A stretch of 64,000 nucleotides of DNA from Zootoca vivipara (lineage: Eukaryota): NCBI RefSeq assembly GCF_963506605.1, contig NC_083287.1, positions 16,058,001 through 16,122,000 on the forward strand. The letters are read 5' to 3'. Below the pieces are notes generated by a model. That model saw only the letters and a list, made by a program, of their open reading frames with translations. It did not search any database and was not told where the DNA came from. The position numbers and the translations under genes were made by a program. Each line of letters opens with the position of its first letter. The stretch's first letter is position 1. Shown here piece after piece: positions 4,291 through 50,043 of the stretch.

Positions 4291-4871
4291 ATTCCACAAA
4301 CATGGTCATCATTTTCCCTCTCACCTCCTTACTTGATATTCACCCTGTTGAAATGCTTTTTAAGGTAATTGGTAGGCCATTAATTAGGCTCAAGAAATCG
4401 GTACAGCCGTGCAGTGTGCCTTTTTTACTTTCACACAAATCATCTGGCCACATCTACTTATCTTTTAAGAGAATTATTTATGAAAGGTGCTCCGTCAAAT
4501 ATTAATATTGGGCTATAATAACTAATGTGTGAATCACTTTAATGGGGAATAGCTATCGATGCTACAACAGTGCTTGGCAATATGTTTCTCCTCAGATTAA
4601 ATGGGCAACTAGCAAAATGAGAATCTTCCTGAGCCAAATCCCTCTTGAAATATACTCGGAGTCGAGAGTATACTTTGCTGCAGGAGCTACTTTGCTGCAG
4701 GAGGGTTTACCTAAATATTACCATGTTTTGGGACATAAAGCTTTATTGTATATAATTGTATATAATGTACTATTTTCTGTCATATCTTGCTACCAGTGGC
4801 AACTGTTCAGAAGTTTGCAAGTTCACATGTTAGGGGGGAAATAAGAAATATAGTACATCGCTTCCTTAGAG

Positions 4872-5327
4872 CAGCGTTTCTCAACCACTGTTCCGCGGCA
4901 CACTAGTGTGCCGCGAGACGCTGGCTGGTGTGCCGCGACGTGCGGCGACGAGAAGGGCGATTTGCATTGTCACGTGCCTGGTGGCCGCCAATAGACAGCT
5001 CTGACCCGCCAGAAAGCAATATTTCTCCTCCTCTTTCCCAAAGCTCAGTGCAAACGAGCCTGGCGGCCGCCAATACACAACACTAACCCGCCGAAAAGCA
5101 ATATTTCTCCTCCTCTTTCCCAAAGCTCAGTGCAAACGAGCCTGGCGGCCGCCAATACACTGCACTTACCCACCAGAAAGCAATATTTGGCAAGTATTTC
5201 TTACAGTCATAATTATAATATAGGGCGGCACAGAGTTAATTTTTTTAACTTTTTTAATGGTGGTGTGCCTCGTGATTTTTTTCACGGAACAAGTGTGCCG
5301 TGGCCCAAAAAAGGTTGAGAAACACTG
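4872..5327 (+). mobile_element. Non-autonomous hAT (Charlie-like) MITE, same family as 47369-48423 but without the cargo
   Basis: TIRs cagcgtttctcaacc...ggttgagaaacactg; 8-bp TSD ccttagag; internal ~80-bp tandem duplication. Confidence 0.9.
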
Positions 5328-6124
5328 CCTTAGAGGACATGATTGCAGTACTTTCTGTATACCATTTCTTTGTTTGCTTGAGCAAAGAAGTGTCAGAAAT
5401 AGTCATTGAATACTACCAATTCATCGTATAATTAGGGAAATTCCACCAAATCGTGTTTGTTACACAATAGCCTGACTGAGCCAAACAGCTGTCCCAGATC
5501 AGCTCTCAGGGTGATGCTTTCTAAACACAGAACCGTATTTGGCATGGGAAGCTAGCTGATCAAGCAATTGACTTGACTGCATCTGTTAAACCCAGGGGTA
5601 GCTTGTGCACAAGGCTGTTATGTTTTGCAGTTTATATGGGTCACAAGGAAATCAGTGAAGATGCAGCCCCCATCCCAGCAACACACATGCATACACACAC
5701 CATATTCACTCCCAGAACACCCAAGGAAATCTGTGTCAAATTTCTGGGAAGACCAAGTGAAATCATGTTGTTTTCCATGAAGAAAACCTAGTGACAGCAA
5801 CCCCTAATTATCTGTGGGTGATCAAAATGTAACACACAATTAAGGATTTATAATATTCTCCCTCTCGCTGTTTCTGTCTCTCTCTATATATATAATGCTT
5901 GAAAGAAGCTGGAACCCAACAAGGCACCATCTTGGCTATTCCTGATGCATAACCTTATCATAGATCTTAAAGGAACTATAAACACTGTGAACTTGCAATT
6001 TTGGGGCACGTGAGTTTTAGGATATCAGAGTCATGACTCCCTTTACATTGGACACATTAGTATTTGTGATTACTCAAGATTCCTGCCTAAGTGCAGAACC
6101 TCAAAATTCATTTTGTTAGTTTGG

Positions 6125-14830: not shown

Positions 14831-14966
14831 CAGGCCTGGCCAAACTTGGCCCTCCAGCTGTTTTGCGACCACAATCCCCATCATCCCTGACCACTGGTCC
14901 TGTTAGCTAGGGATGATGGGAGTTGTAGTCCAAAAACAGCTGGAGACCCAAGTTTGAGGAACACTG
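14831..14966. mobile_element. 136-bp palindromic hAT MITE
   Basis: Homologous to 17596-17731 and 24019-24154; degenerate copies at about 17025-17142, 33365-33480, 37085-37152, 56520-56592 and 60762-60895. Confidence 0.8.
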
Positions 14967-36084: not shown

Positions 36085-36143
36085 CTTTGCACTGATTTGT
36101 GTTTTTGTCTAGAATTGCTTTTGTGGATACAATTTTTCCATAC
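36085..36143 (-). CDS. RBMS3: RBMS3 internal coding exon (part of RRM1; probable exon 3), 59 bp
   Basis: Minus strand reads polypyrimidine tract...ttttcag|G TAT GGA AAA ATT GTA TCC ACA AAA GCA ATT CTA GAC AAA AAC ACA AAT CAG TGC AAA G|gtaagt, giving YGKIVSTKAILDKNTNQCK(G). Splice sites are canonical. The NTNQCK residues match RBMS3 rather than RBMS1 (TTNKCK), from recall. No neighbouring exons were found in the window, consistent with large introns. Confidence 0.95.
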
Positions 36144-45845: not shown

Positions 45846-46055
45846 GTTGCACTCTGATATTATAAATACCAGCTCTTGATGAGGGTACTTCCAGCAATAA
45901 CTATGATGGGTCTTAAGAATACGGCACACTCCTAATTAACTGTGCCAGAATGCAATGCACCCACACCAAATAGTTTCTCCTTTTCCTGATCTGTATCTAA
46001 AATACTGAACTGAAATCTACATTGCTCCATGCAAATGATTATCCGGCTGGACGTA

Positions 46056-46342
46056 CAGTGGTGCCTCGCTAGACGAATTTAATTCATTCCACGGGTCTTT
46101 TCTTATAACGAAAAATTCGTCTAGCGAATCCCATAGGAATGCATTGAAATTTTTTTGATTTTTTTTTTTTGCCCATAGGAACGCATTAATTGAATTTCAA
46201 TGCATTCCTATGGGAAACTGCGATTCGCTAGACGAATTTTTCGCAAAATGAATTCGTCTAGCGAGGGAACCTCCACTAGAAAAAACCTTTCGTTAAGCGG
46301 AAATTTTTTTAAGCAGGGCATTCGTTAAGCGAGGCACCACTG
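46056..46342 (+). mobile_element. Tc1/mariner MITE
   Basis: TIR cagtggtgcctcgct...agcgaggcaccactg; TA TSD; same family as 49226-49514. Confidence 0.9.
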
Positions 46343-47368
46343 TATGTGAATCAACTTTCTTCAAGGGGCCTTCAGTACACCTCTGCACACTATGGCAAAG
46401 CCAAGGATAGAATTTCAGTCCTGCATGGTATAATTTCCTGTCTTTCGCTAATCTGCACTAGGCCCTAATGTTATATTAATGTCATTTTTTTGTGGGTGTG
46501 ATTGAATTATCCACAGCATTAAGAGGATCTGAGGGGTTATGAGAGCGGATACTTCTCGGCACACACAATTACCAAGCAGTATTAAGCATCATCCGTGTGC
46601 CTCCCTTTAGCAGCACTGGGAGACAGCGACGTCGTGAGACAAAGAGCACTTTACGGTTGGCATCTGGCCTGATCCGGCAAGCCCCGTGTGTATAAAAGCT
46701 CCCACTGAAGTAAGCGAAAGCCCTCTTCCACATAGTCCACAGCATTACTGAAAGCAAGCGGCAAATCTTCAATATTCAAAGTGTAACGTGTTGACAGGTT
46801 GGGTCCAGGCTGCTTCTCTCTATAGAGGGTGGTGCACGAATTGGAGTCACTCTGCAGACTTTAATGATAGGAAGAGATTGAAATGTGTCCTATTTCTGGG
46901 GAATGTGAAGAAGGCCCACTGAGATTTGAAAAGCGCAGCCTGCCTGTTAGCTAAAATTCTTACTGCAGACAATTGCTGCAGGGAAAAAGGGGGCAAGCAA
47001 GGGAAAAATAAAAGAAACGGACTCCCAGCTGTGTTAAAGTAAGCCTGTACCACTTATCTGCCTTGGCTGACTGTGAGGTTTTCACACACACAATCCTTAA
47101 GAATCTAACTGAGGAAAGGGGTGGCCTGTATTTTCATTAGTCCAATTGGTGTTGTGCTGTCATGGCAAAGTCGTATTTCAGAGCTACGGGAATGCATTTG
47201 AGTGAGGCCAAGGATCGCATGTTTCCTCTTCCCCCATCTTCCCCCTCTGTGCATGGTCACAAGATGGGAAGATCAGAAGATTTCACTTCCACAAGATTAA
47301 CCCATACGTTGTGGCTACTTGTTTCCTCCAAACTAAGAATGGCGCTTAGGGTTAACTGTTGTTTAAGG

Positions 47369-48423
47369 CAGTGTTTTTCAACATTTTTTGGGCAAAGGCA
47401 CACTTGTTTCATGAAAAAAATCACGAGGCACACCACCATTAAAAAAAGTTAGGGCTTTTGGGGGGGGGTTATTATTTTGTGAAAACAACATGGTCAAAAA
47501 AAATTCCTGTTCCTTTCTTCTTTCATTATTCCTTATTCCCATTGCTATTAGTCAATTATTTTATCAGTGATGGTGCCATAAAGGCATTCTTATTCCTTAC
47601 TCCTATCCCTCAGTCCTATTTTTACTATATTCTGCCAATGACAACCTCCAACTCCAATAATCACCCCTACACTTTCCCTCCACGTCATTTTTCAGCTAGT
47701 ACTGTAGTATAAAATCTTTGCAGCAGCTGTAAAGTTGGTAGTTTCCCATTACAGTATTATTATCTTGCCATTAAACAAACCACTATCCTTACTGACAGAA
47801 ACCCAGAGGACACGGATATTGCCTCTCCGTGTCATTGCTTGCCCCCTCGCTCCCACATCTCAAAGGCAAGCATCGCGCCCCCGCCAGCACCTGCCCCGTT
47901 TTTTATCCACTGGATAAATATCCAAATATCCATTGGAACCCGTGCGACCCCCCGGGAGCAACGGGCCTGCCCCTCCTCAGTCCAGGCCAGGCGCCACTGC
48001 GGCCTCCCCGGCGCCTCACCTTCTGCAGGGCGCACACATTCTCCTCGCCGAAGAGGCCGCTCATGCCCCGGTAGACGCCGCTGGCTGCCCTCCGGAGGCT
48101 GTTCTGCTTGTCGGCCCCGTGGCCTCGCGCCGACCAAGCCCCGGGCGCCACCAGCAAGAGGAGCGAGAGCGAGAAAAGGAGCAGCAGCAGCACCCGCCGG
48201 CCGCCTTTCGCGTCCGAGGCTGTGGTGGTGGCTGTTTAGAGCCGCGCTCGCCCCGCGTCGTGACCCGGCTGGCTTCCTTTCCGGCAGGTCAGCGCCCCCT
48301 AATGGCGGTCGCCTTCTCGTCGCGGCACGTGACCAGGCAACATCTCGCCCTTCTCGTCGCGGCACACCAGGCAGCATCTCGCGGCACACTAGTGTGCCGC
48401 GGAACAGTGGTTGAAAAACGCTG
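47369..48423 (-). mobile_element. Non-autonomous hAT (Charlie-like) element carrying ~850 bp host cargo (Pack-hAT)
   Basis: TIRs cagtgtttttcaac...gttgaaaaacgctg; perfect 8-bp TSD gtttaagg (47361-47368, 48424-48431); both ends are homologous to the element at 4872-5327. Confidence 0.9.
48020..48223 (-). pseudogene. BRI3BP: Captured BRI3BP first coding exon fragment inside a hAT MITE; start codon apparently lost
   Basis: Translates as (T)ASDAKGGRRVLLLLLFSLSLLLLVAPGAWSARGHGADKQNSLRRAASGVYRGMSGLFGEENVCALQK, followed by donor AAG|gtgagg. This aligns with the recalled human BRI3BP N-terminus (LLAPGAQGARGRGGAEKNSYRRTVNTFSQSVSSLFGEDNVRAAQK). Kozak-like GCCACCACC-ACA-GCC sits where ATG is expected, with an in-frame TAA just upstream. 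Confidence 0.85.
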
Positions 48424-48501
48424 GTTTAAGGAAACAATGCAGTAGCAGTAAATCACAGTTAAACTAACCACAGTTTCTCTGGCTTTGGACGTTAAAAAGT
48501 A

Positions 48502-48739
48502 CAGCGGAACCTCAGTTTTCGAACCTAATCCGTTCTGGAAGACCGTTTTGACTTCTAAAACGTTCAAAACCAAGATGCAAAGGGCTGTTGGCAAATTCAA
48601 TTGACAAAATTGAAAACACGCAGCGGAAGCTGTTTGGCTTCTGAGGCTTTAGAAAACAAAAGCATTTACTTCTGGGTTTTTGGCGTTTGGGTTCCGAAAT
48701 GTTCGTCAACAGAGACGTTCAAGAACCGAGGTTCTACTG
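48502..48739. mobile_element. Tc1/mariner MITE
   Basis: TIR cagcggaacctcagtt...aaccgaggttctactg; TA TSD. Confidence 0.8.
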
Positions 48740-49225
48740 TAACTGGTTATTTGAAAATGGGAGTAAAAGCTTCTAATCTCTTTCTCACAGCCATGTCAGA
48801 AGAGAGAAGGCAGAAGAATAGGCCAGAGCTTTGGGCACATAATGCAAAATCTTAGGTTGGTATGAACCAGATTAGTGAGTAGAAGGGATGGGAAAATTTG
48901 TCCATTTTGATTTCCCTCAGATTCTCATTATTCCAATCTTAAATAAAGTTCACATTTCTGTAGCAATAAAACTGCTAGCACATTTGCAAAGCTAAATAGG
49001 GTCCGGTATGGTTTCAAATTGGATGGGGGACCGACCACAAGTTGAGATTTCCTGCATTGCAGGAGGTTGGAACTAGATGACCCTTGAGGTCCATTCCAAC
49101 TCTATGCTTTGATGCCAGTTCTTTCAGTTTGCAATTTATAAGAACTAAAGTTCTCAGGAAAATTCACCAGCATTTTAAAGTGAATTTCTCCTAACAGACT
49201 TTTTTTTTTGCAATTTTGCCTAATA

Positions 49226-49514
49226 CAGTGGTGCCTCGCTAGACGAAATTAATTCGTTCCATTGGTCTTTTCTTATAGCGAAAAATTCATCTAGCGAATC
49301 CCATAGGAATGCAATGGATTTTTTCCGACTTTTTTTTTGCCCATAGGAACGCATTAATTGAATTTCAATGCATTCCTATGGGAAACCGCGATTTGCTAGA
49401 CGAATTTTTCGTAAAACGCATTCGTCTAGTGAGGCAAGCAAGCTCCGCTCGAAAAATCCTTTCGTTAAGCAGAAATTTCGTTAAGCAGGAAATTCGTTAA
49501 GCGAGGCACCACTG
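49226..49514 (+). mobile_element. Tc1/mariner MITE nested in an older repeat (~48885-49720)
   Basis: Same TIRs and interior as 46056-46342; TA TSD. Confidence 0.9.
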
Positions 49515-50043
49515 TATACACATTCTTACAAAGCAATTTTTGCTAATATAATGATGCAATTTGTGCATACTTTATCCCAGGGTATGCATTTTTTGTAGAC
49601 ATGATTTGGCTGGAGAACTGTGCTGCAACATTTGGAGAAGTGCAATTTTTTTGTGTTTTGGTTTGCTTGCTGCTTCAGAAACTGTGAAATATGTAGGTTT
49701 GCCTCTAAATGCAACTTGACTCTCTTCCCCCAATCACTAGTGAAGTTACGTACATGGGTTTCCAATGGGCCCAGATACCTAACATGCTACTCCACCTCTG
49801 GTGCAAATGTAACTCCTCACTTGCTGGCAGGCGTCAGAACAATCTGGCCAATATATTGAACCTACCACACAAGCAATCACTTAGACTTGCAACCAACCAA
49901 TGTTTTGGAGCACGTCCCACAAGCATGGTGACCTGGAAACCACCAGAAATATGCCAAACTGTACTCTAGCCCAACCCATGCCCTATTACTTAGTACCTTT
50001 TTATACATAATGGATTTGGATAGCATATGGGCTCAGCAATTAA

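What the first reader, a model, noticed from the sequence alone, without database searches (positions are those of the whole stretch)
47369..48423. Pack-hAT: a DNA transposon carrying the 5' end of BRI3BP (upstream CpG-rich DNA, exon 1, donor, intron 1)
Seen: intact TIRs and a perfect 8-bp TSD enclose ~850 bp (~47452-48297) that is absent from the sister element at 4872-5327. On the minus strand this cargo reads as CpG-rich upstream sequence, a 68-codon exon with a signal-peptide-like leucine run, a canonical AAG|gtgagg donor, then ~570 bp grading from GC-rich to AT-rich. Recalled knowledge: the peptide matches the BRI3BP N-terminus; gene capture by TIR elements is well known in plants (Pack-MULEs) and reported less often in animals. 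Inference: the retained donor and intron indicate DNA-level capture rather than retroposition. I know of no description of this particular element. High CpG retention suggests it is young or unmethylated.
Basis: partly seen in the sequence, partly recalled or inferred. Interest (0 to 1): 0.9.

Follow-up and report, generated by a model that had tools for sequence, protein, structure and literature searches.

The report
Mobile hAT transposon carrying BRI3BP exon 1
A 1,055-base cut-and-paste (hAT, SPIN-like) transposon in an intron of a lizard RBMS-type gene carries a dead copy of the first coding exon and splice donor of BRI3BP; another individual of the species lacks it at this site, so the loaded element moved as a unit, a known kind of gene capture that is rarely seen mobile in vertebrates.

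Summary
Element 47369-48423 has 14-nt terminal inverted repeats and a perfect 8-bp target duplication (gtttaagg). It shares only its ends with the sister at 4872-5327. The 822-bp cargo (47452-48273) read on the minus strand gives 50 bp, a 204-nt exon, GTGAGG, then 568 bp of low-copy DNA.

The exon peptide matches BRI3BP N-termini (E 9e-18; 82% over 33 residues to sparrow BRI3BP). The match ends exactly at the conserved exon 1 boundary.

- There is no start codon.
- Only about 50 bp of upstream DNA was captured.
- Three conserved residues show CpG-decay changes, so the cargo is a dead fragment.

New results:
- A contig from another individual of the same species joins 47360 directly to 48424, a precise empty site.
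- In individuals without this insertion, cargo contigs sit at about 2-4 times single-copy depth.
- The exon part appears in up to 13 variant contigs, which suggests a transposed family.

No RNA support was found. The parent locus could not be fetched, so the BRI3BP-intron origin of the 568 bp is inferred. This scan already found Pack-hAT elements with other cargoes (OSBPL10, DNAH10, MCAT, EPB41L4B, NRG1) on other DNA of this genome. This is a new member of a known kind.

The parts
47361..47368 (.). Left copy of the 8-bp target site duplication gtttaagg
   Evidence: Read directly. Fits the SPIN-group target consensus NYYTARRN (PMC3014272).
47369..48423 (-). Whole non-autonomous hAT (SPIN-like) element with cargo (Pack-hAT). 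The strand given is that of the captured exon.
   Evidence: TIRs plus target duplication. Ends shared with the sister. Absent as a unit from X4 contig record 15, which joins 47360 to 48424.
47369..47451 (.). Family-own end A: 14-nt TIR at 47369-47382 plus subterminal GGCACAC motifs at 47397 and 47427
   Evidence: 91.6% identical to sister 5327-5246. Depth is thousands of times single copy in X1, X4 and X16. Loose ends in X16 start at 47451 and follow the sister's sequence. GGCACAC occurs 25 times in the window against 6.3 expected, 10 of them in the two elements' ends.
47452..48019 (-). Intron-like part of the cargo (568 bp): GC-rich next to the donor, AT-rich further on. Presumed start of BRI3BP intron 1.
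   Evidence: Follows the donor directly. No copy elsewhere in the window. Low-copy contigs at about 2-3.7 times single-copy depth in X1 and X4, contiguous across 47457-48063. The intron origin is inferred.
48020..48223 (-). Captured BRI3BP exon 1 coding part (68 codons, no ATG). The GT of the donor is at 48019-48018.
   Evidence: R>H, V>M and R>C at residues conserved in orthologues, each a CpG transition. Other copies read CG at 48064 and 48150.
48224..48273 (-). About 50 bp of captured DNA upstream of the expected start position (probable 5' UTR), with an in-frame TAA at 48238-48236
48274..48423 (.). Family-own end B: TIR at 48410-48423, palindrome CCGCGGCACACTAGTGTGCCGCG at 48380-48402, subterminal repeats
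   Evidence: Alignment with sister 4872 to about 5020. BLAST 95.7% over 48355-48423. The palindrome is shared with the sister. Very high depth in all DNA runs.
48424..48431 (.). Right copy of the target site duplication gtttaagg
4872..5327 (+). Sister element of the same family without gene cargo (own internal tandem repeat). Target duplication ccttagag at 4864-4871 and 5328-5335.
   Evidence: Its right TIR matches the SPIN_NA1_AC consensus CAGTGKTTCTCAACCT 16/16.
36085..36143 (-). Exon of the host RBMS-type gene (YGKIVSTKAILDKNTNQCK). It shows that the element lies in an intron, in the sense orientation.
   Evidence: Motif search and direct reading. The name RBMS3 rests on my recall and on note s1-854118.

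Best explanation
This is a non-autonomous SPIN-like hAT transposon. Its interior was replaced by 822 bp copied as DNA from the 5' end of the BRI3BP gene: about 50 bp of 5' UTR, the exon 1 coding sequence, the splice donor and probably the first 568 bp of intron 1.

The capture most likely happened at another locus, by template switching during double-strand-break or gap repair, or at a stalled replication fork, within a family member. The loaded element kept both TIRs and the subterminal GGCACAC repeats. A hAT transposase supplied in trans could therefore cut and paste it.

It then inserted as a unit into the target gtttaagg in an intron of an RBMS-type gene. It is still absent from this site in at least one other individual of the species.

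The cargo is a dead fragment. It has no start codon, it has CpG-decay substitutions at conserved residues, and the one RNA run examined showed no transcription.

Shown: element anatomy, BRI3BP identity of the exon, donor at the conserved boundary, the empty allele. Inferred: intron origin of the 568 bp, the capture mechanism, copy number, the source of the transposase.
For: Anatomy:
- TIRs, 8-bp target duplication and ends shared with the sister.
- Both target duplications fit NYYTARRN, and the sister TIR fits the SPIN_NA1_AC consensus 16/16 (PMC3014272).

Cargo identity:
- E 8.7e-18 against 1.84 billion proteins. Hits include Pfam PF14965 proteins and XP_064248250.1 BRI3BP.
- Homology ends at ..LQK|GT, where orthologues have the exon 1 boundary.

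Insertion as a unit:
- X4 contig record 15 (1527 nt, depth 58.2) covers 46342-47360 and 48424-48690 with adjacent record positions 268 and 267. That is one copy of gtttaagg and no element.
- The X1 contig stops aligning at the same base, 47360.
- Every X1 and X4 contig over the cargo differs from the window at 47502, 47607, 47830, 47943, 47975, 48064 and 48150.

Family:
- Cargo-only contigs have depth 195.7 and 217.1 against 58.2 single copy in X4, and 62.5-88.5 against 30.4 in X1.
- 7-13 variant contigs cover 48064 and 48150, with summed depth 30-130 times single copy.
- A 62-bp deletion variant has depth 725.7 in X4.

Decay:
- At 5 of 8 listed differences in the GC-rich part, the window reads TG/CA where the other copies read CG.
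- R>H, V>M and R>C at conserved residues.

Precedent: Pack-TIRs in animals, 208 of 370 of them hAT (PMC8277862).
Against: - Colinearity beyond the donor is therefore unproven, and the AT-rich part could be a second, unrelated captured piece.
- Contig depths are summed k-mer depths, not copy numbers. The high values over the exon could partly come from GC-rich, leucine-run low-complexity matches at the 85% likeness threshold.
- No listed contig of any run bridges the filled junctions, so the filled state rests on the assembly alone.
- The related species X16 showed no cargo-like contigs at all, not even the expected parent intron. The tool warns that a hole proves nothing.
- No autonomous partner was identified.
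Confidence: 0.85

Rival explanations
1. In-situ capture. An ordinary MITE of the family inserted at gtttaagg, and its interior was later replaced at this very site by gap repair copied from BRI3BP (transposition-independent gap filling). The loaded element never moved.
For: Tan et al. found that most animal Pack-TIRs are single-copy products of gap filling in place (PMC8277862). No second TIR-flanked copy with another target duplication was seen directly.
Against: The conspecific allele is fully empty, with neither MITE nor cargo, so both events would have to be recent and on one haplotype. Cargo sequence is present above single-copy depth, in several variant contigs, in individuals that lack this insertion. 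The window copy differs from all of them, mostly by CpG decay on its own side, which fits descent from an older loaded copy elsewhere.
Confidence: 0.07
2. Composite cargo. Only the exon, the donor and the GC-rich stretch come from BRI3BP. The AT-rich half (about 47452-47800) is a separate fragment from elsewhere, or family-own sequence of a sub-lineage, not BRI3BP intron 1.
For: The related species X16 shows zero contigs on 47508-48043 although its flanks align at about 94%. Protein hits never extend past the donor. Multi-fragment cargo is common in plant Pack-MULEs (general knowledge).
Against: GC content falls smoothly with no recognisable junction. Contigs in X4 tile 47457-48063 without a break at similar low depth. 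The stretch is neither repeated in the window nor high-copy.
Confidence: 0.2
3. Functional exaptation. The captured CpG-rich exon with its donor acts as a new alternative first exon or promoter of the host RBMS-type gene. The ATG at 48039-48037 is in frame with the exon at 36143-36085.
For: The captured exon has the same orientation as the host gene. It has an intact GTGAGG donor. Read by eye, the frame ATG TGT GCG CCC TGC AGA AG|G TAT GGA is open. Tan et al. report that transcribed Pack-TIRs often form chimeras with neighbouring genes.
Against: The RNA run X21 gave depth 0 on 47508-48043 and about 1-2 reads on the exon. The two reads that cover the diagnostic site 48150 carry the allele of the other copies (G). 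No joints from the donor were reported. The insertion is not fixed. The window copy shows CpG decay, which implies germline methylation.
Confidence: 0.04
4. Assembly artefact. The element is a chimeric join of reads, not a real insertion.
For: No listed contig from four runs bridges the filled junctions, and no run holds more than 0.63 of the sampled words of 46800-49000.
Against: A chimera would not create a perfect 8-bp duplication that fits the family's target consensus, flanking complete TIRs. It would also not match the empty allele base for base.
Confidence: 0.02

Closest known systems
Animal Pack-TIRs, especially multicopy Pack-hAT such as Pack-hAT-N8_XT carrying the CAPSL 5' UTR in Xenopus tropicalis (Tan et al. 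2021, PMC8277862)
   Same: A non-autonomous hAT element with intact TIRs and an 8-bp target duplication. Its interior is a DNA-level copy of the GC-rich 5' end of a host gene, and there are signs of transposition after capture.
   Different: The cargo is larger: 822 bp against a median of 224 bp. It includes a coding exon, the donor and intron-like DNA. The host is a lizard; the four multicopy cases among 370 in that paper were three in frog and one in alligator. Here an empty allele within the species is seen directly. The parental copy was not identified here, and that study required one.
SPIN and SPIN_NA non-autonomous hAT-Charlie elements of squamates (SPIN_NA1_AC of Anolis; Novick et al. 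2010, PMC3014272)
   Same: TIR consensus CAGTGKTTCTCAACCT (sister 16/16, loaded element 13-14/16), target consensus NYYTARRN, 8-bp target duplication, very high copy number of short derivatives.
   Different: The internal and subterminal sequence (GGCACAC repeats, a 23-nt palindrome) was not compared with SPIN consensus sequences. No transposase was examined. The Anolis survey reports no gene capture; a search of that paper for 'captured' and 'transduplication' found nothing.
Pack-MULEs of rice and other plant Pack-TYPE elements
   Same: TIR elements that pick up gene fragments, with a bias towards GC-rich 5' ends, and amplify them.
   Different: A different superfamily (Mutator, 9-bp target duplication), in plants, with thousands of elements. 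Here it is a vertebrate hAT family.

Membership tests
hAT superfamily (non-autonomous member) | 8-bp target site duplication | tested here: met
   gtttaagg on both sides of the loaded element and ccttagag on both sides of the sister.
hAT superfamily (non-autonomous member) | Short TIRs with the terminal motif YARNG | tested here: met
   The ends read CAGTG and CAGCG. The motif is as stated in PMC3014272.
hAT superfamily (non-autonomous member) | A matching autonomous element with a hAT transposase (DDE and dimerisation domain) in the same genome | not testable with these tools
   There is no transposase in the window and the genome cannot be searched. Earlier scan notes mention hAT transposase genes, but none was linked to these TIRs.
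SPIN-like group of hAT-Charlie | TIR CAGYGGTTCTCAACCT / CAGTGKTTCTCAACCT | tested here: met
   Sister right TIR 16/16 and left TIR 14/16. Loaded element 14/16 and 13/16.
SPIN-like group of hAT-Charlie | Target consensus NYYTARRN | tested here: met
   gtttaagg and ccttagag both fit at all 8 positions.
SPIN-like group of hAT-Charlie | Sequence homology of the element body or transposase to SPIN consensus | not tested
Pack-TIR (gene-fragment-carrying TIR element) | Intact TIRs and target duplication enclosing sequence foreign to the family | tested here: met
   The 822 bp are absent from the sister and from the canonical family reads.
Pack-TIR (gene-fragment-carrying TIR element) | The foreign sequence is homologous to a host gene | tested here: met
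   BRI3BP exon 1, E 8.7e-18, ending at the conserved donor.
Pack-TIR (gene-fragment-carrying TIR element) | The parental copy is identified elsewhere in the same genome | not testable with these tools
Multicopy (transposition-dependent) Pack-TIR | Several copies with different target duplications, or an empty orthologous or allelic site | tested here: met
   A precise empty allele in X4 contig record 15. The copy-number signal comes from contig depth only, and other target duplications were not seen.
Intact BRI3BP exon 1 | Start codon and conserved residues retained | tested here: not met
   There is no ATG between the in-frame TAA (48238-48236) and the conserved block. R>H, V>M and R>C at conserved positions.

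The most novel reading that the evidence does not exclude
The SPIN-like hAT family of this lizard is still transposing in living populations. It repeatedly picks up CpG-island 5' ends of genes and spreads them: BRI3BP here, and OSBPL10, MCAT, EPB41L4B and NRG1 in earlier notes of this scan. That would make it a vertebrate counterpart of the rice Pack-MULEs. It would scatter spliceable first exons with donors through introns of other genes, such as this copy in sense orientation in an RBMS-type gene.
Probability: 0.3. Interest if true: 0.75.

Novelty: new member of a known kind. Interest (0 to 1): 0.5.

Why it matters
Capture of gene fragments by cut-and-paste transposons is well documented in plants. 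In animals it has been catalogued mostly as single-copy, immobile products. Tan et al. 2021 found only 4 multicopy cases among 370, and none in a lizard.

Here a loaded hAT element can be seen with both its filled and its empty allele inside one species. The signs point to a small family. That gives a natural system for studying three things in a vertebrate: how Pack elements arise, how they move, and how they decay (CpG loss after leaving the promoter context).

Taken with the other cargoes this scan found in the same genome, it points to a family-level tendency to capture 5' CpG-island exons. That could be tested genome-wide. On its own, this copy looks non-functional.

Tried and rejected
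- Pfam scan of the 72-residue peptide: no family, because exon 1 lies outside PF14965.
- The search for homologous proteins with the 110-codon read-through of exon plus intron: 4 hits, all covering only the exon part (38-39% of the query), so no colinearity test was possible.
- The search of earlier findings by sequence: blank. By the word BRI3BP: only this same stretch.
- Literature search for 'Pack-TIR' with 'lizard': no paper.
- Self-BLAST of the element against the window: no second copy of the cargo.
- RNA run X21: no coverage of cargo or flanks, so no support for expression or for splicing into the host gene. The genotype of that individual is unknown.
- A retrocopy origin was considered and rejected, because the donor and non-coding DNA follow the exon.
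- The idea that this is the real BRI3BP locus with two independent MITE insertions was rejected. The two ends form one element with one target duplication, the whole unit is missing from the empty allele, and the surrounding gene is an RBMS-type gene.
The frame was read by eye only.

Full report
**1. What is in the sequence**

The element spans 47369-48423. It begins CAGTGTTTTTCAAC and ends GTTGAAAAACGCTG (13/14 complementary). The octamer gtttaagg flanks it on both sides, at 47361-47368 and 48424-48431.

A second element of the same family lies at 4872-5327, between two copies of ccttagag. The TIR pattern occurs five times in the window against 0.6 expected by chance. Four of the five are the ends of these two elements.

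The two elements share only their ends:
- 47369-47451 matches the sister at 91.6%.
- 48355-48423 matches at 95.7%.
- Weaker but clear homology runs inward to 48274.

Both carry a 23-nt palindrome next to one TIR and five copies each of GGCACAC in their ends. That motif occurs 25 times in the window against 6.3 expected, and never in the cargo. This is the usual look of subterminal transposase-binding repeats (inference).

The foreign interior is therefore 47452-48273, 822 bp.

**2. Family of the transposon**

An 8-bp target duplication and YARNG termini define hAT elements. The Anolis DNA-transposon survey lists SPIN_NA1_AC with TIR CAGTGKTTCTCAACCT and target consensus NYYTARRN (PMC3014272).
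- The sister's right TIR fits 16/16.
- The loaded element's TIRs fit 14/16 and 13/16.
- Both target duplications fit the consensus at all eight positions.

I file it as a non-autonomous SPIN-like hAT element. The body was not compared with SPIN consensus sequences, and no transposase was examined.

Contig depth over the ends is thousands of times the single-copy level, both in this species and in a related one. The carrier family is therefore a very abundant MITE.

**3. Identity of the cargo**

On the minus strand the cargo reads as follows:
- 50 bp, with an in-frame TAA at 48238-48236;
- 204 nt of open frame (48223-48020);
- GTGAGG;
- 568 bp whose GC content falls from about 0.65 to about 0.37.

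A phmmer search of the 72 stop-free codons against 1.84 billion proteins gave 27 hits at E <= 1e-3, the best at 8.7e-18. All lie at protein N-termini. Three of the ten hits scanned carry Pfam PF14965 (BRI3BP). P0005 is XP_064248250.1, 'BRI3-binding protein [Passer domesticus]', 82% identical over 33 residues.

Homology ends exactly at ..ALQK. The full-length proteins continue there with exon 2 (FFSRLTERF and the like). Read-through ORFs from contigs of several other species continue with V, a GTN codon. The donor in the window therefore sits at the conserved exon 1 / intron 1 boundary. A donor followed by non-coding DNA excludes a retrocopy.

**4.

- There is no ATG at or near the position where orthologues start. 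The only Met in the frame (..RGMSG..) stands where orthologues have Val and where the other copies in the species read C at 48064, giving GTG.
- Only about 50 bp lie upstream of the coding part, so no promoter-sized piece was captured.
- The copy carries R>H (CGC>CAC), V>M (GTG>ATG) and R>C (CGC>TGC) at residues conserved across orthologues. Each is a CpG transition.
- CpG observed/expected is still 0.87 in the GC-rich part, against 0.35 for the window. At 5 of the 8 listed differences from the other copies, the window has TG/CA where they have CG (47943, 47960, 47996, 48064, 48150). The reverse is seen once, at 48210.

So this lineage has begun to lose CpGs. That is expected for a methylated, non-promoter copy.

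**5. Reads and contigs (on 45900-49900; runs chosen)**

*Empty allele.* In X4, which is the same species from another study, one contig (record 15, 1527 nt, depth 58.2) aligns to 46342-47360 with record positions 268-1286. It aligns to 48424-48690 with record positions 1-267. Position 47360 is thus joined directly to 48424. This is the empty site with a single gtttaagg and no trace of the element.

In X1 the flank contig also stops aligning at 47360, with 48 further letters that were not listed. In the related species X16 the contig aligns up to 47368 and then continues. An exact empty allele, together with a target duplication that fits the family's consensus, rules out an assembly chimera. 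It also shows that the loaded element arrived as one unit.

*Cargo elsewhere in the genome.* In these same individuals, contigs lying wholly inside the cargo have depths well above single copy:
- X4: 195.7 and 217.1 against 58.2.
- X1: 88.5, 73.3 and 62.5 against 30.4.

These contigs tile 47457-48063. Every one differs from the window at diagnostic positions.

*Exon part.* Over the exon, 7-13 distinct contigs are laid at 48064 and 48150. Their summed depth is 30-130 times single copy. A variant with a 62-bp deletion (48063>48126) has depth 725.7 in X4.

I read this as a family of loaded elements: a few with the long cargo, and more with shortened cargo. The caveats are that these are summed k-mer depths, the threshold was 85% likeness, and part of the exon is a leucine-run of low complexity.

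*Related species.* X16 has the MITE ends in abundance but no cargo-like contigs. This fits a capture after the two species split. The parent intron was also not seen there, and the tool warns that holes prove nothing.

*How recent.* Flank divergence between the window and X1 or X4 is 0.7-0.9% (7 and 9 differences in 1019). A second transposon at 49224-49514 is also missing from X1, X4 and X16. The reference haplotype is therefore fairly distant from the sampled ones, and 'recent' means younger than that coalescence.

**6. Expression and host context**

A minus-strand exon at 36143-36085 encodes YGKIVSTKAILDKNTNQCK, an RBMS-type RRM exon. I take it for RBMS3 from memory and from note s1-854118. 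The element thus sits in an intron, in the sense orientation.

Read by eye, the ATG at 48039-48037 is in frame with that phase-2 exon, as the other note says. I did not build or search a joined model.

The RNA run X21 (about 6% of the run was read) gave no reads on 47508-48043 and about 1-2 on the exon. The two reads that cover the diagnostic site 48150 carry the allele of the other copies (G). No joints from the donor were reported. There is therefore no evidence of use. The genotype of that animal is unknown.

**7. Mechanism**

*Shown:* a complete cis-apparatus for hAT transposition around a DNA-level copy of a gene's 5' end, and a filled and an empty allele.

*Inferred:* the capture arose by template switching, either during repair of an excision gap or at a stalled fork in a family member. 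These are the gap-filling and FoSTeST models of Tan et al. (PMC8277862). Inferred too is that the product was then mobilised in trans.

Breakpoint microhomology could not be examined without the parent sequence.

In-situ capture at this site is unlikely, for three reasons: the alternative allele has no MITE at all, cargo copies exist elsewhere, and this copy has diverged from them.

**8. Comparison with what is known, and novelty**

Tan et al. 2021 found 370 young Pack-TIRs in 100 animal genomes:
- 208 were hAT.
- The median cargo was 224 bp.
- Only four were multicopy (three in frog, one in alligator).
- The multicopy ones tended to capture GC-rich DNA.

The present element is of that kind, so it is not a new category. 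It is notable for four things: the 822-bp cargo with exon, donor and intron-like DNA; the lizard host; the directly observed empty allele; and the family signal. I found no paper that pairs Pack-TIR with lizards.

Within this scan, Pack-hAT elements with other cargoes (OSBPL10, DNAH10, MCAT, EPB41L4B, NRG1, a Myb/SANT exon) were already reported on other DNA of this genome. Several had read-depth signs of amplification, and one was absent from other individuals. This case adds a new cargo and agrees with that pattern.

**9. Limits**

The parent locus, other copies with their target duplications, and the autonomous partner remain unseen.

Noticed in passing
window 49224-49514 and 46053-46342: Two inverted copies of a roughly 290-bp MITE flanked by TA, with TIR CAGTGGTGCCTCGC... 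(looks Tc1/mariner-type). Contig depth is about 20,000 times single copy. The copy at 49224-49514 is missing from contigs of two conspecific runs and of a related species (joint 49223>49515). The copy at 46053-46342 is missing in the related species (joint 46052>46343). A second DNA-transposon family therefore shows insertion polymorphism within 1 kb of the Pack-hAT.
   Followed up: partly
window 36085-36143, minus strand: An RBMS-type RRM exon (YGKIVSTKAILDKNTNQCK) with a phase-2 acceptor and a GTAAGT donor. The window lies inside this gene on the minus strand. The ATG at 48039-48037 of the captured exon is in frame with it, as note s1-854118 says, but no RNA read supports use.
   Followed up: partly
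window 4990-5170: The sister element's interior is a tandem array of about three units of roughly 80 bp (GGCGGCCGCCAATACA...GCAATATTTCTCCTCCTCTTTCCCAAAGCTCAGTGCAAACGAGCCT). Breakpoint B of the cargo falls just after the first GAAAGNAA of that unit.
   Followed up: no
window 48446-48700 and 48980-49250: The right flank of the insertion is itself repetitive, at hundreds to thousands of times single-copy depth in all three DNA runs, including the other species. The left flank 46436-47239 is single copy.
   Followed up: no
window 14952-14966: A lone TIR-like match on the minus strand (CAGTGTTCCTCAAAC, 2 mismatches). It may be the end of a more diverged hAT relative.
   Followed up: no
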